IMG/VR virus record: IMGVR_UViG_3300005859_000094
Span: 1-6,622 of that record
Reading direction: 5' to 3' (one strand)
DNA length: 6,622 bases
The notes below the pieces were generated by a model, which was given only the letters and a program-made list of their open reading frames with translations, ran no database searches and was not told where the DNA came from. Below, one piece after another: positions 1-6,622 of the stretch (the first letter of the stretch is position 1; each line of letters opens with the position of its first letter). Position numbers and translations under genes: made by a program.

Positions 1-346
1 GATAAAGATGATATTCCTTCAGTTGAAAATAGTTAGTTGAAATAGTTTTAATTTCGAGCAAATCGTTACCACAAATCAAGTCAATACGACCAGAGATTTT
101 CAGACCTTCTATTTCACCTTTAACTTCAATTTCAGCTTGACAATTCAATTTCTCAACAAAATAATTCTCAATTCTCTCATGATGAAGTTCTCCTAAGTCC
201 AAGACTAGCTCATTTATCCCTTTCTCAAATTCAAATTTTCTAGCAAAATATGATTTTCTAAAACAAACGCCAACTTCAGATGGAAATATTGTATTTTCTG
301 GATATTTGACTTTAAAACTTTGTCTTACAAAATCTTCATAATTCAT
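1..346 (-). CDS. Cas4-like (RecB/PD-(D/E)xK family) nuclease, SIRV2 gp19-like; 3' end lies outside the window
   Basis: Manual translation from ATG at 346: [34 protein letters not shown]...[10 protein letters not shown]...[18 protein letters not shown]...EYHLY. It shows Cas4-type motifs (PS-x-x-x-x-C-x-RK, G-x-x-x-H, GRID, EIK). An SD-like GGTGA lies at 353-357 (- strand), and the gene starts 2 nt after the ATPase stop. Confidence 0.9.
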
Positions 347-348
347 TC

Positions 349-1656
349 TTAATCACCAAGGTTTGAAAATCTCATGAAATTGTAAATCTGATTACAAATT
401 TCTTCTTTTTGTCTCTGACCGATTTGCAAATCTATATCTAGAGCTTGAAGTAAGATTTGTATGTCAATCGCTTGTTCTTGTCTTCTAGATTCCAAATTAT
501 CACAAACTATATAATTAGTTATATTGTTTATCTTTTGCTGAATTAGATCAATTAGAGCTTTCAAGATTGAGGGATATAGAACTCTAGCATTTATAATTTT
601 ATCATAAGTTTTCTTAATTGCAAGTTGGATAATATGAATTCTATCTAAAATTGCAGAAGTAAAAATTTGATAATTTACTAAATAATCTTCAACATCTGGA
701 TTTCTTAATTTGTTAATTGTCATAGAATATGGATTTCCGGCATAAATTATTGGAATACATTTTTGGATAGTTGAGGATTTTGATTCAGTTCCGGCTCCTC
801 TAGTCCATACACAATTTTCCAGACCGGTTGATAAAGTAGCATTTATCGCACCAAGTTCTTTTGTCGAAAATCCATCTTTCCAATTCTGGATTTCATCAAA
901 TATTAAGCCATTTGACAAAAACACTGCACCATACATATTATTTCTGGCATCATAAACTAGATTTGCATATGTTGGCGGTTCTGTATAATATCGGAAATTG
1001 AAAACTTCTTGCAAAATCATAAATGTTGTAGTTTTCCCAGTTCCACGATTTGAAATTTCTATATAGTTAATTTGACGTTTGGTAATTGGAGATTTAAAAA
1101 GTGGGAATAGACGTGGTAGAAATAGAAATATATCTTCAGTTTCCATTTTCATAACGTCATATCCGAATGCCTGAAATAGAAGAGCATACGTTTGATGTTC
1201 TTGATTTGCTAAGTCAAGAAGTTCTTTAGCAATTTCATAATTGTTCTGTGGTTCTATAGAATAAATATCATGAACATACCAGCCATTCACGCCTTTCCTA
1301 ATTTTGACAAACATATAAGAAGTTATTAAATTATAGAAATCTTCAGGATTATCAGCTATTTGATGAGGGTCAAAACTTCCTATAAATCCGTTTTGAAACT
1401 TAGCAATTACCATGTCATCTTTAACTTTAAAATTAGTAATTTTTGAGATAAATTTTATTTCATTATCAAATAGAAGATAGCTTTGGAAATATTGTTGATC
1501 AATTCCACGTTTGTAAGCTTTTAAAATCTCGATTTTCTTTCTCTCATCAATTTGTTTTCCAGAAAGAATGATGTTGAGAACTCTTTCAGTGTCTCGAGGG
1601 TTGTAAAAAAAAGAATGTTGTTTAACTTTTTCCAAGAACTGAGATGAACTGCTCAT
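349..1656 (-). CDS. AAA+ ATPase / putative helicase, SIRV2 gp18 (ORF436)-like; BrxL/MCM-related ATPase domain
   Basis: 435 aa with Walker A-like SNRGTGKTT, Walker B LIFDE, sensor-1-like YAGN and arginine-finger-like AILDRIH. It lies between the SSB and Cas4-like genes, as in rudiviruses. Confidence 0.88.
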
Positions 1657-1674
1657 AAAAAAAATAAAAATTTA

Positions 1675-1686
1675 TGACATTTTAAA
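1675..1686 (-). promoter_or_regulatory. TATA box + TGTCA element for the ATPase gene
   Basis: - strand TTTAAAATGTCA, ending 19 nt before the ATG at 1656. The TATA box overlaps the SSB stop codon. Confidence 0.7.
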
Positions 1687-2095
1687 ATTCATCTTCAACA
1701 TTCTTCTTTGTTTGTTTTTTCTGTTGTTTTTCTTCCTTTTGTGAAGATTTTTGTTGTTCTTCATTCTCTGTTAACTCTAATTCTTCTTCTTGAATTCTAT
1801 TGCCATTTCTTGGAGTAAACTTAACATATTCATTCAAAAGATCAGCATATTTTGTTAAGAATTCACTAATTAATCTTAAATCTTCAGCATCATTAGCAGT
1901 TATTCCAATTTGTTTCTTGAAATTATTTTGACTATGTATAGTCATTGAATATCTTATTTTTCCATTTTCTGGAATTGCATTTATTTGAACAACTATTCTC
2001 TTTAGACCTTTTATTTTTAAAATTCTAGATGCTGGTTTATTGTTTTGTTTTGCTTGTTGACTTAATTCATCAAATATTTCTTTTAAGGAAGCCAT
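1682..2095 (-). CDS. Single-stranded DNA-binding protein, SIRV2 gp17 (ORF131)-like
   Basis: 137 aa: basic N-terminal domain, low-complexity Q/K/E linker and acidic-aromatic C-terminus (VEDEF). First gene of the SSB-ATPase-nuclease block. SD-like GGGG at 2103-2106 (- strand). Confidence 0.82.
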   Translation of the reverse strand: MASLKEIFDELSQQAKQNNKPASRILKIKGLKRIVVQINAIPENGKIRYSMTIHSQNNFKKQIGITANDAEDLRLISEFLTKYADLLNEYVKFTPRNGNRIQEEELELTENEEQQKSSQKEEKQQKKQTKKNVEDEF

Positions 2096-2124
2096 TCTTA
2101 TTCCCCAATTATCAATATATAATA

Positions 2125-2137
2125 TGACAAATTTAAA
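2125..2137 (-). promoter_or_regulatory. TATA box + TGTCA element for the SSB operon
   Basis: - strand TTTAAATTTGTCA, ending 30 nt before the ATG at 2095. Confidence 0.75.
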
Positions 2138-2195
2138 TATTCACAAATATATAAGTTAGAATATTGTTTCTTATTTATGAGATAAATGTAAAATG

Positions 2196-2221
2196 TAATA
2201 TTCATTATATTTCAAATATGA
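2196..2221 (+). repeat. Dispersed copy of the repeat unit found at 6044-6190
   Basis: taatattcattatatttcaaatatga matches 6109-6134 (taatattctttatattttgaatatga) at 23 of 26 positions. Confidence 0.6.
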
Positions 2222-2255
2222 ATTTGTGAGATTGGGAAATAGGAGAAAAAAATAT

Positions 2256-2543
2256 TTAAATTAAATTAAGGAATATTGATCTTATTATTTTTACCGGTTT
2301 GATATTATATTTTTCTGACAATTTTTGCAATTTTTCATAATATAAATCATCTATTGTAAAAAATACTCTCTCGTCATAATTATCTTGACTTTCTATTATT
2401 CTAAATTCTTTTTCTTCATTTAAGATTTTATCTATCTCTTGTTTTATTTGTTCTCGTTTTTCATAAAAAAGACTTTTATATCTTGAAGGTATACGCAATT
2501 CTATATACTTATTTCTTTGCCTTTTCATAATTTTATATATCAT
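2256..2543 (-). CDS. Ribbon-helix-helix DNA-binding protein, possibly with tandem RHH units
   Basis: The C-terminal ERVFFTIDDLYYEKLQKLSEKYNIKPVKIIRSIF fits the RHH pattern, and the N-terminal KYIELRIP strand-helix looks like a degenerate second unit. ATG at 2543 is preferred over the track's TTG at 2546 because it lies 18 nt from a TGTCA element. Confidence 0.7.
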   Translation of the reverse strand: MIYKIMKRQRNKYIELRIPSRYKSLFYEKREQIKQEIDKILNEEKEFRIIESQDNYDERVFFTIDDLYYEKLQKLSEKYNIKPVKIIRSIFLNLI

Positions 2544-2560
2544 CAACCTTCATTTAAACT

Positions 2561-2582
2561 TGACATATACATTTAAATGTCA
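2561..2582. promoter_or_regulatory. Bidirectional promoter between the RHH gene and Rep
   Basis: TGACATATACATTTAAATGTCA has TGACA and TGTCA at its two ends and a perfect 12-bp palindrome ACATTTAAATGT (2569-2580). Each end is 18 nt from an ATG (2543 on -, 2600 on +). Confidence 0.75.
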
Positions 2583-2599
2583 GGTTTTTATTTTTGTTC

Positions 2600-2947
2600 A
2601 TGGATTGTAAAAAAGTTTTTAGCTATCACTTTCTTTATACTTATACATATTTTGTGACAATAACTACAAATTATCGTTACAATTCCACGATTCCGATTTA
2701 TAAAAAATTTCGGCAATATGTGTATAATCATGACTCATCAGCTCATATTTTTTCAGTTAAGGAATATACAACAAAATTTCACGGTCTTCATTATCATGTC
2801 CTAGTATTTACGAATAAAAAACTTGATTATTCTAGAGTTCACAAACATATGCCTCCGCATTCTGACATACATATTCAATTAGTCCCAAAAACAAAAAAAG
2901 ATATAAAAAAAGTTTTAACTTATATGTTAAAAAATCAAATCATTTAG
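2600..2947 (+). CDS. HUH-superfamily Rep initiator/nickase, SIRV1 ORF119 / SIRV2 gp16-like
   Basis: Motif I-like YFVTIT, HUH motif HGLHYHVLV and catalytic Tyr motif YMLK. ATG at 2600 is preferred over TTG at 2594 on promoter spacing. Confidence 0.9.
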   Translation: MDCKKVFSYHFLYTYTYFVTITTNYRYNSTIPIYKKFRQYVYNHDSSAHIFSVKEYTTKFHGLHYHVLVFTNKKLDYSRVHKHMPPHSDIHIQLVPKTKKDIKKVLTYMLKNQII

Positions 2948-3233
2948 ATTGTTGTTGGGAATTTTGGTTTTGTGAAACTTTTTTCTGAGCTAGATTATTT
3001 ACGTCTGAAAGTGTATCCATATTTAAAAGTGCATTTACGCCAAGAGTAGTTGTAGTTTTAATACTTTCAATTGCTGTAATAATAGCTTTTGTCATCTGAT
3101 CAATTGCATTTTGAAATGCCTCATTTGCTTGCTTTTGATTGTACAAATACACTATTTCACCTACAACATATGAACCTATCAATACGCTCATTAATATTAG
3201 AAATCCTTCTAGAGCTTCTGCAAATATGCTCAT
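2940..3233 (-). CDS. PVAP, virus-associated pyramid egress/lysis protein (SIRV2 P98 / STIV C92 family)
   Basis: 97 aa with an N-terminal TM helix followed by GEIVYLYNQKQANEAFQNAIDQMTK...AIESIK...G(V)NALLNMDTL, closely matching SIRV2 P98 as recalled. Confidence 0.9.
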   Translation of the reverse strand: MSIFAEALEGFLILMSVLIGSYVVGEIVYLYNQKQANEAFQNAIDQMTKAIITAIESIKTTTTLGVNALLNMDTLSDVNNLAQKKVSQNQNSQQQSK

Positions 3234-3291
3234 TTCAATTTCATATTAAATAAATTGCTTAGTAATAAATTTTCCACAAAAATTCGAAATA

Positions 3292-3304
3292 TATAAATAT
3301 GTCA
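3292..3304 (+). promoter_or_regulatory. TATA box + TGTCA element for the svtR-like/copG-like pair
   Basis: TATAAATATGTCA, ending 28 nt before the ATG at 3332. Confidence 0.75.
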
Positions 3305-3331
3305 TAATGTAAATTTTTGAGATGATAAAAA

Positions 3332-3493
3332 ATGGAGGCACAAACTAAGAAAGAAAAAGTAGTTTTCGGAATAAATATGGACAAAGAGCTAAAGAAGAAA
3401 TTGAAGGCTTATTGTGTTGAGCATGATATAACGATAACTGAAGCTATAGAAACTGCCATAAAAGAATATTTAGAAAAGAGGGGAGTTAAATGA
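3332..3493 (+). CDS. svtR: SvtR-like ribbon-helix-helix transcriptional repressor (53 aa; not in the ORF track)
   Basis: Manual translation MEAQTKKEKVVFGINMDKELKKKLKAYCVEHDITITEAIETAIKEYLEKRGVK. The pattern VFGIxMDKxLK...LKxYC...AIExAIKEYL matches SIRV1 P56b/SvtR as recalled. Confidence 0.85.
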   Translation: MEAQTKKEKVVFGINMDKELKKKLKAYCVEHDITITEAIETAIKEYLEKRGVK

Positions 3494-3648
3494 AGACGAT
3501 AACTATAAAAATTCCAGAAGATTTGTTAAAAGAATTAGATGAATATGCTAAAAAGCATGACCTTTATAGAGCTGAAGTTATAAGATCAGCAATTGAGGAA
3601 TTTCTGCAAACTCATGAAAGAGTTACTAAAGCAATGTATAAAAGCTAA
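3490..3648 (+). CDS. CopG-family ribbon-helix-helix regulator (52 aa; not in the ORF track)
   Basis: MKTITIKIPEDLLKELDEYAKKHDLYRAEVIRSAIEEFLQTHERVTKAMYKS is a typical CopG RHH. It has an ATGA overlap with the upstream gene and an SD-like GAGGGGAG at 3478-3485. Confidence 0.88.
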   Translation: MKTITIKIPEDLLKELDEYAKKHDLYRAEVIRSAIEEFLQTHERVTKAMYKS

Positions 3649-3682
3649 AAAATAAGAATTTATTAAGACAATTTATCTTTTT

Positions 3683-4198
3683 TTATTTAAATTTCGGTAA
3701 AGTAACATTTCTTTGATATTGATATTTTCCGTGATATGGTTTCTCAACTGGAGTTATTGTTTTAGCGAAAATTAGATGTAAAAATCTTTCTCCAACTTTT
3801 AATTTTACTGGAAATTCTGAGCCAACAACTTCAATTGTTAATTCGCCTTTAAATCCCGCATCAACAATAGTAGGCGGTATAGAAATTCCAAGTCTGGCAT
3901 AAGTAGAGCGTAGATTTACAAAAGCCATAACATCATTTGGAAGTTCTATATATTCCAGAGTTGTCATTAAAAGGTGTTCATGTGGTTGAACTATAATCTC
4001 GTTAGAATTTACAATTTCGTAAAAATCTTCTATATTGTCACCAGGCTCAAAAACTTTATCTGTCTTTTTTAATCTAGCAAATTGGTTTCCAATTCTTAAA
4101 TCTATGCCATTTTCCCTAACTATTTCTTCTGAATATGGTACTATTTTTATCCATTCTTTTTCCAGATAATATTTTAAATCTCTATCGCTTAAAATCAT
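3683..4198 (-). CDS. dUTPase / dCTP deaminase family (trimeric dUTPase fold), rudiviral dUTPase-like
   Basis: Motifs [39 protein letters not shown] and PYHGKYQ. Confidence 0.92.
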
Positions 4199-4225
4199 AG
4201 TTTATCGATTTCAAGATTCATTATA

Positions 4226-4238
4226 TGACAAATATATT
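4226..4238 (-). promoter_or_regulatory. TATA-like + TGTCA element for the dUTPase gene
   Basis: - strand AATATATTTGTCA, ending 28 nt before the ATG at 4198. Confidence 0.65.
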
Positions 4239-4250
4239 TTCAATTATTAT

Positions 4251-4481
4251 CTATTTTTTTATTTCTGGAATTTTTTTACATGCATCATCTTCAAAAAATT
4301 CTATATATTCATCGTCCATAGTTCCTAATGGGTCAAAATATTCAATTCTATAACATTTTTCACCACATCTTACATAACAACATCAATCTGTACAATACAT
4401 ATTGTCAAAATCGCATTCATCTTTAATACATGTTCTACATTCATCTTCAATTTTTTGATTTGAATTATCTTGTTTTTCCAT
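4251..4481 (-). pseudogene. Cys-rich acidic 76-codon ORF interrupted by an in-frame TGA at codon 33 (pseudogene, read-through or sequencing error)
   Basis: MEKQDNSNQKIEDECRTCIKDECDFDNMYCTD*CCYVRCGEKCYRIEYFDPLGTMDDEYIEFFEDDACKKIPEIKK(TAG), with the TGA at 4385-4383. It has its own TATA-TGTCA promoter and fills the gap between neighbouring genes. Confidence 0.65.
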
Positions 4482-4519: not shown

Positions 4520-4762
4520 TTATACTTTTCTTTTTAATTTCTTAATTTCTGTTTCAAGTTCATCAATTCTTTCGTAAAGGTCATCAATCATATCTAATAG
4601 CCAAGTTAAAATTATAGCTAAAAAAATTGCTACAATTGCTGAAATTAGATCTATATCTTGTGAATTTTTTGACAAAATCTCTATAGAAAAAATTAAAAAC
4701 AAAGAATATATTGATATTAAAAGAGTTGAAAAAATATACAATAGATAAGTTAATTTATTCAT
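4520..4762 (-). CDS. Small membrane protein: two TM helices plus a C-terminal coiled coil
   Basis: 80 aa with two hydrophobic stretches (about residues 4-30 and 37-56), followed by the heptad-like DDLYERIDELETEIKKLKRKV. Confidence 0.75.
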   Translation of the reverse strand: MNKLTYLLYIFSTLLISIYSLFLIFSIEILSKNSQDIDLISAIVAIFLAIILTWLLDMIDDLYERIDELETEIKKLKRKV

Positions 4763-4789
4763 GATTAATCAGTTTTATTTTTCGTTATC

Positions 4790-4802
4790 TGACAAATAAA
4801 AA
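4790..4802 (-). promoter_or_regulatory. TATA-like + TGTCA element for the membrane protein gene; the T-run may double as terminator of the upstream gene
   Basis: - strand TTTTTATTTGTCA, ending 28 nt before the ATG at 4762. Confidence 0.55.
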
Positions 4803-4826
4803 AAATGAGGATTAAAAAATATTATC

Positions 4827-5609
4827 TTAAACAAGAGTTCTGCATAATGGACATTTATAAGTTCTTTTATATTTTTGTAGATAATAATTTGGGTCTTTCT
4901 GAATATCTCTGAAATATATTTTTTGATGATTATAAAATAGTCCTGAAACATTACCTCCTAGTTCTGTTTCAACATCTACAAATTTCTGAAAGAATTCGGG
5001 ATTCTTTAAAGCAAGTACTGCAAAGTCTGCTGGAGATTTAAACGCAGAACACCAGCATTCGTAAGCTTTGCCGTAAATATCATAAAGCGGATTCTTTTTT
5101 AAACCGTGAATTTTAATGTATTCTTCTACATCTTGTTCTGTAAAGTCATGAATTATTGCATAGCTCATAGCTTTAATTTGTTTGTTATAATAGATTTTCT
5201 GTGTTCTACTTTTTACCCAACTTTCATCTTTTCTAACGCCGGTAACTAATACAATTTCTTCTTTATCTTTTACGAAATCTTTTAAAGGTTTCAGTTTTAG
5301 ATAATATTTACACCATCTCCTTGTAATTGTAGGAAATCCAATTCTTTTTACTAGCTCAAAATAATCATATTTCGGGCCGATAATTGTCAATTCGACTCCT
5401 AATTCTTTACATGTTTCTTTTACATAATCTATAACTCCTGGAGTCGGAATTCCGGTATTTATAAATAATGCTTTCGTTTTTTCTGGGAAAATTGACTTTG
5501 TTAAATGTAGAGCAACTAACGAATCTTTTCCACCGCTGAACATTACATAAATTTCCTTGAAATTCTGTAAATCTTTTTTTGCTTCTTCAATTACTTTTTG
5601 CAGATCCAT
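4827..5609 (-). CDS. PAPS reductase family (CysH/DndC-like) PP-loop adenine nucleotide alpha-hydrolase
   Basis: 260 aa with PP-loop MFSGGKDS, FINTG, RRWCKYYLKLKP, TGVRKDES, a late ECWC and a C-terminal CPLC. Confidence 0.88.
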   Translation of the reverse strand: MDLQKVIEEAKKDLQNFKEIYVMFSGGKDSLVALHLTKSIFPEKTKALFINTGIPTPGVIDYVKETCKELGVELTIIGPKYDYFELVKRIGFPTITRRWCKYYLKLKPLKDFVKDKEEIVLVTGVRKDESWVKSRTQKIYYNKQIKAMSYAIIHDFTEQDVEEYIKIHGLKKNPLYDIYGKAYECWCSAFKSPADFAVLALKNPEFFQKFVDVETELGGNVSGLFYNHQKIYFRDIQKDPNYYLQKYKRTYKCPLCRTLV

Positions 5610-5629
5610 CTTGAAATTATTTAAATGTC

Positions 5630-5642
5630 TGACAAATATTAA
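5630..5642 (-). promoter_or_regulatory. TATA-like + TGTCA element for the PP-loop enzyme gene
   Basis: - strand TTAATATTTGTCA, ending 21 nt before the ATG at 5609. It overlaps the stop codon of the upstream ORF. Confidence 0.65.
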
Positions 5643-5932
5643 CCTTCATTCTTTTGTCCACAAAAAACATTGATTTCGAATATGTTATGATTATATCTCC
5701 AATTCACTTTTATTAATTCTGGATATCTAAAAGTTTTAATTATATAATTTACAATTCCTAGACCCTTTTTTTCATAAAATTTTATACTCACATTCATTTT
5801 AATTTTTATAGATACAAGATTATCATCTTCTAGAACTAGAAAATCATAGACGTTGTCAGAGTAACGGCTTTTTAACCATTTAAAAACTTGAACTGTATAT
5901 TTTCTACATTCATAAATTGCTAAATCATTCAT
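5639..5932 (-). CDS. Hypothetical viral protein (97 aa, alpha/beta)
   Basis: Intact ORF with an ATG start and its own TATA-TGTCA promoter. No motif recognised. Confidence 0.75.
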   Translation of the reverse strand: MNDLAIYECRKYTVQVFKWLKSRYSDNVYDFLVLEDDNLVSIKIKMNVSIKFYEKKGLGIVNYIIKTFRYPELIKVNWRYNHNIFEINVFCGQKNEG

Positions 5933-5950
5933 ATTTTAAACTTTATTATG

Positions 5951-5963
5951 TGACAATTTAAAA
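5951..5963 (-). promoter_or_regulatory. TATA box + TGTCA element for the 97-aa ORF
   Basis: - strand TTTTAAATTGTCA, ending 19 nt before the ATG at 5932. Confidence 0.75.
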
Positions 5964-6043
5964 GTTCAATATTAATTTAGATATAGGATATTTATCATTG
6001 TGTAATTCTCGAAATTATTATAATTTTTATGAATTCTAATTTC

Positions 6044-6190
6044 ACAATTCATATTCATAATATTTTGAATATTGCTTTTTTTCTTACTTGTGAAACAAAA
6101 TTGACAATTAATATTCTTTATATTTTGAATATGAGTTTGAGTTTGATTTTTTTGTCAATTTTAACAATTAATATTCATCATATTTTGAAT
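6044..6190. repeat. Three imperfect 27-bp direct repeats at an exact 60-bp period, separated by unique 33-bp spacers
   Basis: acaattcatattcataatattttgaat (6044-6070), acaattaatattctttatattttgaat (6104-6130) and acaattaatattcatcatattttgaat (6164-6190). Confidence 0.85.
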
Positions 6191-6197
6191 TAGACAT

Positions 6198-6208
6198 GAA
6201 AATTTAAA
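6198..6208 (+). promoter_or_regulatory. BRE/TATA promoter of the major capsid protein gene (no TGTCA)
   Basis: GAAAA followed by TTTAAA (6203-6208), 33 nt upstream of the ATG at 6241. Confidence 0.6.
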
Positions 6209-6240
6209 TTATAGAAAAAAGATTTGATAATTGAACAAAA

Positions 6241-6622
6241 ATGCCAAGAGGGCATACACCAAGAAGTTATTCGCAAAGGTACGCGAAATGGCAAGCAAAG
6301 TTTACTGCATTTAGCAATCCAACTGTAGCGTCAACAATCTTAACTAACGTAGCTCCAGTTGCTCAAGAGAATTTCCAGACTAATGTACCTAAATTTGTCT
6401 CTGTAAATGAGCAAGTCAGTGCTGTATTAACTCAGTACGGTATAACTGGGCCACAAAGGGCAATTTATCAGGGTTACGGTCTAAAAATTGCTAGAGCTTT
6501 AAATAGAATTGGGTCTGGGCCAGCTCTAGTAAACATGATTAATGGTCTCAAAGCTTATTACATAAATGCCTTTAACGCTAATCCAGAAGTTTTAGATGCT
6601 GTAACTAACATTATAACCGGTT
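6241..6622 (+). CDS. Rudivirus major capsid protein (SIRV2 P134/gp26-like); runs off the window end
   Basis: Manual translation MPRGHTPRSYSQRYAKWQAKFTAFSNPTVASTILTNVAPVAQENFQTNVPKFVSVNEQVSAVLTQYGITGPQRAIYQGYGLKIARALNRIGSGPALVNMINGLKAYYINAFNANPEVLDAVTNIITG, highly similar to the SIRV coat protein as recalled. Confidence 0.97.
   Translation, partial: MPRGHTPRSYSQRYAKWQAKFTAFSNPTVASTILTNVAPVAQENFQTNVPKFVSVNEQVSAVLTQYGITGPQRAIYQGYGLKIARALNRIGSGPALVNMINGLKAYYINAFNANPEVLDAVTNIITG

What the first reader, a model, noticed from the sequence alone, without database searches (positions are those of the whole stretch)
4827..5609. Stand-alone PAPS-reductase/DndC-like PP-loop enzyme in a rudivirus: candidate nucleic-acid modification or anti-defence enzyme
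Seen: an intact SGGKDS loop, RWC, GVRxDES, CWC and a terminal CPLC. It lacks the CC...CxxC arrangement of APS reductases and the C-terminal ECGLH of CysH, and no sulfate-assimilation genes are in the window. Established: this family includes DndC/SspD of DNA phosphorothioation systems and other adenylating/thiolating enzymes. Inference: it may adenylate or thiolate viral DNA, tRNA or a host defence component, possibly with the Cys-rich neighbour as metal/sulfur partner. That would be an undescribed viral modification module.
Basis: partly seen in the sequence, partly recalled or inferred. Interest (0 to 1): 0.65.

Follow-up and report, generated by a model that had tools for sequence, protein, structure and literature searches.

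The report
Rudivirus copy of a defence-island PP-loop enzyme
A Yellowstone-type Sulfolobus rod-shaped virus picked up, as a single-gene cassette, an ATP-using enzyme with a predicted iron-sulfur site; its closest cellular copies sit in DNA-modification and defence gene islands, so it more likely marks DNA or counters host defence than feeds sulfur metabolism.

Summary
The ORF is real: 4827-5609, minus strand, 260 aa. It belongs to the PAPS-reductase (PF01507) superfamily but fits none of the curated families (CysH, APS reductase, CysD, DndC).

It has a canonical SGGKDS ATP-pyrophosphatase loop and no ECGLH. Its three family-conserved cysteines (C100, C185, C187) align with iron-sulfur ligands of APS reductase, so saying it lacks the CC...CxxC arrangement is literally true but misleading.

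The gene is an 830-840 bp cassette that SIRV7 and SIRV9 lack. It is under strong purifying selection (dN/dS 0.035 against a second rudivirus contig).

Orthologues at 67-76% identity occur in bicaudaviruses (ATSV, SMV2), a fusellovirus provirus and a pRN-like element. They also occur in two types of Sulfolobales chromosomal island. There the gene sits beside a conserved P-loop ATPase, a DndC-like protein or a DNA methyltransferase, and helicase-nuclease pairs.

Best reading: a virus-captured DNA-modification enzyme, probably a thiolating one, used for self-protection or counter-defence. No Cys-rich neighbour exists. The idea is not undescribed: phage PAPS reductases are already discussed as DndC/SspD-like anti-defence genes. 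I rate it a new member of a known kind, of moderate interest.

The parts
4827..5609 (-). 260-aa PAPS-reductase-superfamily PP-loop protein (the finding)
   Evidence: ORF. PF01507 at 1.6e-24. phrog_424 at 1.1e-47. AF2 model pLDDT 92.2. Closest folds are APS and PAPS reductases, Z 18-19.6.
5520..5537 (-). SGGKDS PP-loop (residues 25-30), the ATP-pyrophosphatase signature
   Evidence: S25, G26, G27, D29 and S30 are invariant in 40 homologues. CysH and APS reductase carry a degenerate loop at this position in the printed alignments.
5310..5318 (-). R98-W99-C100; C100 is a predicted Fe-S ligand
   Evidence: R98 and C100 are invariant. C100 aligns with the second Cys of the 'CC' in APS reductase 2goy.
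5220..5240 (-). GVRKDES (residues 124-130), aligned with the GQRRDQS segment of APS reductase
   Evidence: G124 and S130 are invariant; R126 and E129 are conserved in at least 90%. Alignment.
5049..5057 (-). C185-W-C187, predicted Fe-S ligands
   Evidence: Nearly invariant. C185 aligns with the first Cys of the APS-reductase CxxC. Relatives carry CxC or CxxC here.
4842..4853 (-). C-terminal C253-P-L-C256 on a low-confidence tail; candidate fourth ligand or sulfur-carrying Cys
   Evidence: pLDDT is below 50 for residues 254-260. A C-terminal Cys motif is present in all 46 RWCK-type homologues and in none of about 25 RWCC-type ones.
4799..5627 (.). Single-gene cassette absent from SIRV7 and replaced by 248 bp in SIRV9
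   Evidence: blastn shows window 4527-4797 and 5628-6620 abutting at SIRV7 locus L009 8241-8250. DNA similarity to ATSV and SMV2 is confined to the ORF.
4788..4798 (.). 11-nt direct repeat TCTGACAAATA, right-hand border copy
   Evidence: Exact repeat with 840-nt spacing. SIRV7 has a single copy at the ORF17/ORF16 junction, and both copies are kept in contig L190. An 11-mer repeat alone is near chance expectation in this AT-rich kilobase; its position at both borders is what counts.
5628..5638 (.). 11-nt direct repeat TCTGACAAATA, left-hand border copy
5639..5932 (-). Upstream neighbour, 97 aa (phrog_8699). A rudivirus backbone gene, not a partner.
   Evidence: 81% and 71% identical to SIRV9 ORF23 and SIRV7 ORF17, which lack the PAPS gene. 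It has 2 Cys only.
4520..4762 (-). Downstream neighbour, 80 aa, hydrophobic N-terminus plus coiled coil (phrog_9310). A backbone gene, not a partner.
   Evidence: Homologous to SIRV7 ORF16 and SIRV9 ORF21. It has no Cys.

Best explanation
The gene encodes a stand-alone PP-loop ATP pyrophosphatase with a predicted [4Fe-4S] site. It belongs to the non-CysH side of the PAPS-reductase superfamily, the side that also holds DndC, SspD and BrxP. Shown: the rudivirus acquired it as a one-gene cassette; it is kept under strong purifying selection; and it belongs to a tight Sulfolobales clade in which copies from four kinds of virus or mobile element interleave with copies in chromosomal islands. In those islands the gene always lies next to the same P-loop ATPase. 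It also lies next to either a DndC-like protein plus an SF1 helicase and a PD-(D/E)XK nuclease, or a DNA N6-methyltransferase plus an SF2 helicase and a PLD nuclease. Inferred mechanism: the enzyme uses ATP to adenylate an oxygen on its substrate, most likely DNA. A cluster- or cysteine-bound sulfur then displaces AMP, which is a DndC/SspD-like thiolation. The virus copy would put the host's 'self' mark on viral DNA early in infection, probably using host partner proteins. It would thereby escape the helicase-nuclease arm of the cognate island, much as phages use orphan methyltransferases.
For: Family and fold: PF01507 at 87 bits; AF2 pLDDT 92; APS and PAPS reductases at Z 18-19.6. Not metabolic: all curated CysH, APS, CysD and DndC models score far below their cut-offs; it has a canonical SGGKDS loop where CysH and APS reductase are degenerate; it has no ECGLH. 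Fe-S site: C100, C185 and C187 are conserved and align to the APS-reductase cluster ligands; the fourth Cys switches between RWCC and a C-terminal Cys motif. Cassette. Selection: dN/dS is 0.035 (dS 0.42) against contig L190, compared with 0.17 and 0.73 for the two flanking genes. Spread: 76% identity to ATSV and 74% to SMV2; a fusellovirus provirus in A. ambivalens; a pRN-like element. Island contexts. Tree: virus and island copies interleave, and the window sits in a 10-row clade (support 99/97) with ATSV and island copies. Only 2 of 201 genomes of the order hold a close copy; the other matches listed are at most 37% identical, in reading frames of roughly 250-730 aa. Literature: phage PAPS reductases are read as DndC/SspD-like anti-defence genes, with Piel et al. 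2022 cited for Dnd evasion.
Against: There is no biochemical or DNA-chemistry data. The virus carries only this one gene and none of the island partners, so it cannot modify DNA unless host factors are present. Close copies are rare in sequenced Sulfolobales. PADLOC scores for SspD, BrxP and DndC are modest (60, 58 and 40 bits). The best NCBIfam hits are uncharacterised archaeal multidomain paralogues (PRK13795, PRK08557), not DndC. Adjacency in islands could be hitch-hiking of an anti-defence gene among defence genes. The Cys covariation may rest on few independent events.
Confidence: 0.5

Rival explanations
1. tRNA or RNA thiolation, or a related RNA modification. The enzyme would act like TtuA, NcsA or TtcA, or like the uncharacterised archaeal PAPS-reductase paralogues (called PUA fusions in the SMV2 record), to retune host or viral translation.
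For: The best NCBIfam matches are the archaeal PRK13795, PRK08557 and PRK08576 proteins at 90-100 bits. SMV2's orthologue is annotated as a 'PUA-PAPS reductase-like fusion'. TtuA and NcsA [4Fe-4S] thiolases are structural neighbours at Z 14-15. ATSV has a tRNA nucleotidyltransferase 1.7 kb away, and SBRV1 carries a TGT homologue.
Against: The 260-aa protein has no PUA, THUMP or other RNA-binding domain. Identity to the cellular paralogues is at most 37%. Cellular orthologues sit with a DNA methyltransferase, helicases and nucleases, not with translation genes. A fusion with ParB_N occurs in a relative.
Confidence: 0.15
2. Stoichiometric decoy. The viral protein binds and titrates a host partner of the island, such as the ATPase or a sulfur donor, and blocks defence without modifying anything.
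For: It is stand-alone in viruses, whereas cellular orthologues always have the ATPase nearby. Viral copies of defence components acting as inhibitors are a recognised theme in the literature.
Against: All catalytic motifs (SGGxDS, RWC, CxC, CPxC) are strictly kept in the full-length viral and proviral copies examined. dN/dS is 0.035, which suggests catalysis is maintained.
Confidence: 0.1
3. Auxiliary metabolic gene: an unconventional APS or PAPS reductase that boosts assimilatory sulfate reduction in the infected cell. This is the customary annotation.
For: The closest solved folds are APS and PAPS reductases. The Fe-S ligand positions are those of APS reductase. A flexible C-terminal tail bearing Cys recalls the catalytic ECGLH tail. 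Papers on archaeal viruses read such genes as sulfur AMGs.
Against: It has a canonical ATP-type PP-loop instead of the degenerate sulfonucleotide loop. It has no ECGLH. Scores are 34-55 bits against cut-offs of 154-254. RWCC-type relatives have no tail Cys at all. Cellular orthologues lie in defence-like islands, not in cys operons. No other sulfur-assimilation gene is in the window.
Confidence: 0.07

Closest known systems
Orthologues in other Sulfolobales viruses: ATSV gp88, SMV2 AIZ11372, truncated SYV2 gp30
   Same: 74-76% identical over the full length for ATSV and SMV2, with the same motifs including the C-terminal CPLC. All are stand-alone.
   Different: They sit in unrelated virus backbones (Bicaudaviridae, unclassified). 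No flanking genes or flanking DNA are shared. The SYV2 copy has lost the PP-loop.
DndC, SspD and BrxP (PP-loop proteins of the Dnd, Ssp and BREX type 4 DNA phosphorothioation systems)
   Same: All share the PF01507 fold with a canonical SGGxDS loop. The conserved Cys sit at Fe-S positions; the papers describe DndC as an iron-sulfur protein and BrxP as having a 4Fe-4S-like Cys-rich region. All have defence-island context. PADLOC scores are SspD 60 bits, BrxP 58 bits and DndC 40 bits.
   Different: It is much shorter than DndC or BrxP and has no DUF4007 or extra domains. The TIGR03183 DndC model gives 31.6 bits against a cut-off of 290. There is no dndA/D/E or sspA/B/C next to it. In three islands and one mobile element a separate DndC-like gene co-occurs with it, so it is not simply the local DndC.
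Assimilatory APS reductase (P. aeruginosa 2goy, M. tuberculosis 7lhs) and E. coli CysH (1sur)
   Same: These are the best structural matches, at Z 18.7-19.6 over about 185 residues. The Cys positions are homologous to CC...CxxC.
   Different: Those enzymes have a degenerate P-loop, the catalytic ECGLH tail and thioredoxin chemistry. Here the loop is a canonical SGGKDS, there is no ECGLH, and there is an extra roughly 70-residue C-terminal domain with no PDB sequence match.
Phage PAPS-reductase-like genes (phrog_424; the Vibrio phage gene reported to evade Dnd, Piel et al. 2022)
   Same: It is the best profile match of all, at 164 bits. These are accessory genes in variable regions and are proposed to act against defence.
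   Different: Identity to bacterial phage proteins is only 25-30%. Many phage versions carry an N-terminal extension, since the window protein matches only positions 158-371 of the 460-position phrog_424 profile; one archaeal-virus relative has a weak ParB_N match. I could not read the Piel paper itself.
Archaeal cellular PRK13795, PRK08557 and PRK08576 proteins (N-terminal domain + PAPS_reduct +/- 2x[4Fe-4S] ferredoxin)
   Same: These are the highest NCBIfam scores, at 90-100 bits over residues 19-212.
   Different: Matches lie mostly in reading frames of about 430-730 aa and were found in 132 of the 201 genomes sampled, often as several paralogues, at no more than 37% identity. Their function is uncharacterised as far as I know (own knowledge).

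Membership tests
PF01507 PAPS_reduct superfamily (adenine nucleotide alpha-hydrolase fold) | Profile score above the gathering cut-off, and the Rossmann-like PP-ATPase fold | tested here: met
   87.3 bits against 22.5. Z 18-19.6 to solved members.
PP-loop ATP pyrophosphatases | Canonical SGGxDS loop | tested here: met
   SGGKDS at residues 25-30, invariant in 40 homologues. ATP hydrolysis itself cannot be tested here.
CysH / PAPS reductase (TIGR00434, TIGR02057, PRK02090) | Model score above cut-off, and a C-terminal ECGLH catalytic Cys | tested here: not met
   47.4, 33.8 and 54.8 bits against cut-offs of 165, 254 and 154. There is no ECGLH in the translation.
Assimilatory APS reductase (TIGR02055) | CC...CxxC [4Fe-4S] ligands plus the ECGLH tail, and model score above cut-off | tested here: not met
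   36.9 bits against 235. Only a variant C...CxC is present at the homologous positions, and there is no ECGLH.
DndC (TIGR03183) | Model score above cut-off, a protein of about 450-550 aa, and neighbouring dndD/dndE (with dndA or iscS) | tested here: not met
   31.6 bits against 290. The protein is 260 aa, and no dnd partner is in the window.
SspD | Match to the SspD profile, and co-location with sspA/B/C | tested here: inconclusive
   PADLOC SspD at 6.4e-17, covering positions 5-220 of 277, but that library has no curated cut-off. No ssp partner is in the window. The island ATPase and the roughly 350-aa protein gave no SspB or SspC hit.
BrxP (BREX type 4) | PAPS-reductase domain fused to extra domains or DUF4007, inside a brx operon with PglZ | tested here: not met
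   Only the catalytic core matches (58 bits, profile positions 128-337 of 779). There are no brx genes in the window.
[4Fe-4S] protein | Three or four clustered Cys ligands, and a cluster seen by spectroscopy | not testable with these tools
   Inferred only from conservation, alignment to 2goy ligands and covariation.
FAD synthetase (Fad1 / FADS PAPS domain) | Sequence membership and flavin-binding C-terminal elements | tested here: not met
   There is a structural match at Z 14-17.6. The profile match to 8rom covers only the N-terminal region with the P-loop, residues 16-79.

The most novel reading that the evidence does not exclude
Sulfolobales carry a so far unnamed DNA-modification defence module. 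It would consist of this 260-aa Fe-S PP-loop enzyme plus a conserved 520-590-aa P-loop ATPase and a roughly 350-aa protein, coupled either to a DndC-like protein, an SF1 helicase and a PD-(D/E)XK nuclease, or to an N6-methyltransferase, an SF2 helicase and a PLD nuclease. Its modifying enzyme would have been captured repeatedly by rudi-, bicauda- and fuselloviruses as epigenetic mimicry. That would be the first counter-defence of this kind in archaeal viruses, and possibly a new DNA chemistry.
Probability: 0.3. Interest if true: 0.75.

Novelty: new member of a known kind. Interest (0 to 1): 0.5.

Why it matters
Archaeal-virus 'PAPS reductases' are routinely annotated as sulfur-metabolism helper genes. 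The evidence here points the other way: sequence features argue against CysH chemistry, and the closest cellular copies sit inside modification-restriction-like islands. If the gene really marks viral DNA or disarms such an island, three things follow. It would give a testable entry into anti-defence mechanisms in Sulfolobales viruses beyond their anti-CRISPRs. It would flag two candidate archaeal defence islands. It would also warn against counting such genes as auxiliary metabolic genes in viromes.

Tried and rejected
- **PptA (PDB 21fy_C).** It hit the family profile at E 1.2e-9 over nearly the full length. Three paper searches found nothing relevant. It did not appear in the single-sequence searches. 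A profile of the C-terminal domain alone gave only noise. The lead is dropped.
- **Complex prediction.** I tested the window protein against the island ATPase. The tool returned no verdict (score 0.01). This is not evidence either way.
- **Genome look-ups.** The genome search could not reach the genomes behind L004 and L006 and does not draw relatives for a virus record. I used a handle from Ignicoccus (G001) instead.
- **Piel et al. 2022.** The paper is not held, so its claim is cited second-hand from PMC13551039.
- **SMC-like ATPase next to distant relatives (L198, P0044).** I suspected DndD, but it scores better as LmuB-like (53 bits) than as DndD (16 bits). I do not call it DndD/DndE.
- **ESM Atlas.** It gave nothing for the 361-aa island protein.
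- **Big representative protein search.** Not run. Family scans and the word search had already placed the protein.
- **sigma-70 promoter scan.** Not used, because it is not applicable to archaea.
- **Tree against SspD.** No bona fide SspD reference sequence could be fetched, so placement against SspD, DndC, BrxP and CysH rests on HMM scores only.

Full report
**1. What the window is.**
The 6,622-bp contig is the whole record held. It is a Yellowstone-type rudivirus. It is about 76-79% identical at the DNA level to SIRV5-10 (Usarudivirus) over positions 1-4261. It carries the rudivirus coat protein (PF12193), the 117-like Rep, the PHA01746-like protein, a dCTP deaminase and a BrxL-like ATPase protein. 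A second metagenomic contig, L190, has the same gene order and is 83% identical at the DNA level.

**2. The observation.**
ORF 4827-5609 (-) is intact and encodes 260 aa. SGGKDS (25-30), RWC (98-100), GVRKDES (124-130), CWC (185-187) and CPLC (253-256) are all present. PF01507 matches at 1.6e-24. There is no ECGLH and no sulfate-assimilation gene in the window. The neighbours are not Cys-rich: the 97-aa ORF has 2 Cys and the 80-aa ORF has none. Both are ordinary backbone genes present in SIRV7 and SIRV9, which lack the enzyme.

**3. What kind of enzyme it is.**
- The AlphaFold2 model is confident (pLDDT 92.2), except for the last seven residues.
- The closest solved folds are APS and PAPS reductases: 7lhs Z 19.6, 1sur 19.1, 2goy 18.7.
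- Next come the FAD-synthase PAPS domain (17.6), CysD (16.9), GMP synthetases (about 16), and TtuA, NcsA and LarE (about 14-15).
- It fits no curated family: PRK13795/PRK08557/PRK08576 90-100 bits, CysH 47-55, CysD 45, APS reductase 37 and DndC 32, all far below cut-offs of 154-1086.
- PADLOC gives SspD 60, BrxP 58 and DndC 40 bits. phrog_424 gives 164 bits.
- The PP-loop is canonical and invariant in 40 homologues. CysH and APS reductase have a degenerate loop at that position (alignments). From established knowledge of PP-loop enzymes, this points to ATP-dependent adenylation rather than sulfonucleotide reduction.

**4. The cysteines.**
- C100, C185 and C187 are invariant or nearly so.
- In the profile alignment to P. 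aeruginosa APS reductase, C100 falls on the second Cys of 'CC' and C185 on the first Cys of 'CxxC'.
- Across 79 homologues, every RWCK-type sequence (46) has a C-terminal CPxC or CxxxCxC.
- Most of the roughly 25 RWCC-type sequences, which have the APS-like double Cys, have no other Cys after the CxC. None has a C-terminal Cys motif of its own, apart from one ferredoxin fusion.
- RFCT-type sequences have a different C-terminal Cys.
- This fits a [4Fe-4S] cluster whose fourth ligand is either the adjacent Cys or a tail Cys. Alternatively the tail Cys carries sulfur. It is an inference, and it may rest on few independent events.

**5. How the gene got there, and whether it is kept.**
- Relative to SIRV7, window 4798-5627 is a clean insertion between the homologues of ORF16 and ORF17. 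SIRV9 has an unrelated 248 bp there.
- An exact 11-nt direct repeat (TCTGACAAATA) sits at both borders. SIRV7 has a single copy at the junction, and L190 keeps both copies.
- DNA similarity to ATSV and SMV2 (71%) stops at the ORF ends.
- Between the two rudivirus contigs the gene has dS 0.42, dN 0.015 and dN/dS 0.035. The flanking genes give 0.17 and 0.73. The protein is clearly under selection in the virus.

**6. Relatives and their contexts.**

Virus and mobile-element copies:
- ATSV is 76% identical, SMV2 is 74%, and SYV2 holds an N-terminally truncated remnant.
- There is a copy in an SSV-like provirus of Acidianus ambivalens, next to VirArc_Nuclease.
- A pRN-like element, L191, also has a DndC-like gene.
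- A virus-like contig, L195, has the gene beside a 966-aa DUF1156 methyltransferase.

ISLAND1, in Sulfurisphaera ohwakuensis L004, a second species G104/L188 and contig L193:
- a 495-aa protein;
- a DndC-like protein of 398 aa (PADLOC DndC 1.5e-36);
- an SF1 helicase;
- a PD-(D/E)XK protein of 653 aa;
- the 260-aa gene;
- a 589-aa P-loop ATPase (ESM Atlas lead: BrxC_BrxD/Orc1-like);
- a 361-aa protein.

ISLAND2, in L194 and L196:
- a PLD nuclease (DrmC/DpdK/PbeA-like);
- an SF2 helicase of 966 aa (DpdJ/BrxH/DrmA-like);
- a 444-aa protein;
- an N6-methyltransferase that ends 4-17 nt before the PAPS gene;
- convergent genes for a 344-aa protein and a 531-aa ATPase.

Other points:
- The ATPase is homologous in all five island copies. 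It has GRGKT and DEFE motifs.
- More distant relatives (L198, P0044, L197) sit by an SMC-like ATPase plus a TRIP13-like AAA protein.
- A Methanoculleus virus fuses the domain to a weak ParB_N match.
- In 201 genomes of the order, only 2 hold a close copy (73% and 72%; one of them is the provirus). The remaining matches listed are at most 37% identical, mostly in frames of about 430-730 aa.
- In the IQ-TREE tree of 55 rows, the Sulfolobales clade is supported at 100/99. Inside it, virus and island copies interleave. The window, L190 and P0003 (100/100) lie in a 99/97 clade with ATSV and ISLAND1/2 copies. This implies repeated exchange between viruses and islands.

**7. Interpretation.**
Shown:
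- the enzyme class;
- the failure to fit CysH;
- the retained Cys positions;
- the cassette structure and the purifying selection;
- the shared ancestry with island genes.

Inferred:
- the Fe-S cluster;
- adenylation followed by thiolation;
- DNA as the substrate;
- self-protection or counter-defence as the role.

The inference rests on context with methyltransferase, helicases, nucleases, a DndC-like protein and ParB. It also rests on the literature view of phage PAPS reductases (PMC13551039; BrxP in PMC12839542). The customary AMG reading for archaeal viruses is the least supported rival. RNA modification and a decoy role remain open.

**8. Novelty.**
Orthologues are already deposited and annotated, and the anti-Dnd idea is published for phages. 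This is therefore a new member of a known kind, and the first in Usarudivirus-like genomes among those compared here. What appears new, to my knowledge, is the link to two conserved Sulfolobales island types.

**9. Limits.**
- There are no wet-lab data.
- No SspD, DndC or BrxP reference tree was built.
- The complex prediction gave no verdict.

Noticed in passing
L004:3252-14476 (Sulfurisphaera ohwakuensis), L188, L193: A conserved seven-gene island: a 495-aa protein, a DndC-like protein of 398 aa, an SF1 helicase, a PD-(D/E)XK protein of 653 aa, the 260-aa PP-loop protein, a 589-aa P-loop ATPase and a 361-aa protein. PADLOC gives no system-level match. It is a candidate uncharacterised archaeal defence or modification system.
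   Followed up: partly
L194:305-11455 and L196: A second island type: a PLD nuclease, a DpdJ/BrxH/DrmA-like SF2 helicase, a 444-aa protein, an N6-methyltransferase in an apparent operon with the PP-loop gene, and convergent genes for a 344-aa protein and a 531-aa ATPase.
   Followed up: partly
L003:4115-4582 (Sulfolobales virus YNP2): The YNP2 copy starts at about residue 71 of the family. The PP-loop region is missing and the upstream frames carry stops, so it looks like a decaying remnant.
   Followed up: partly
window 4520-4762 (-): The 80-aa hydrophobic/coiled-coil protein next to the cassette is only 31% identical to its counterpart in contig L190 (dN/dS 0.73). The adjacent enzyme is 97% identical. 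This small gene is evolving very fast.
   Followed up: no
window 349-1656 (-): The 435-aa conserved rudivirus protein, annotated 'protease' or 'putative ATPase' in SIRVs, matches the BrxL-like Lon-type ATPase domain PF13337 at 4.8e-13. BrxL is a BREX component.
   Followed up: no
window 3683-4198 (-): The dCTP deaminase/dUTPase-like gene is present here and in SIRV5-7 but absent from the same position in SIRV8-10. It is another variable accessory gene in this stretch.
   Followed up: no
L191:6422-7333 and 10001-10789: A pRN-like element or virus contig carries both a short DndC-like gene (303 aa, PADLOC DndC 7e-41) and the 262-aa family member. It also has an XPD-like helicase, a Cas4-like nuclease and an RNA ligase.
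   Followed up: no
L011:1242-2486 (Methanoculleus virus L4768 gp05): This gene is annotated 'DNA modification methylase' but is in fact a weak ParB_N domain fused to a PAPS_reduct domain. No methyltransferase domain was found by Pfam.
   Followed up: partly
PDB 21fy chain C ('PptA', 270 aa): This solved structure of unknown context matches the family profile over nearly its whole length (E 1.2e-9). No paper was found. It may be the closest solved relative.
   Followed up: partly
L198:3397-8572, L197:12496-16831, contig of P0044: Distant family members (RWCC or CxxxCxC types) sit beside a conserved set: an SMC-like ATPase (LmuB-like), small proteins, a TRIP13/IetA-like AAA protein and two unknown proteins of about 300 aa. 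This is another defence-like neighbourhood.
   Followed up: partly
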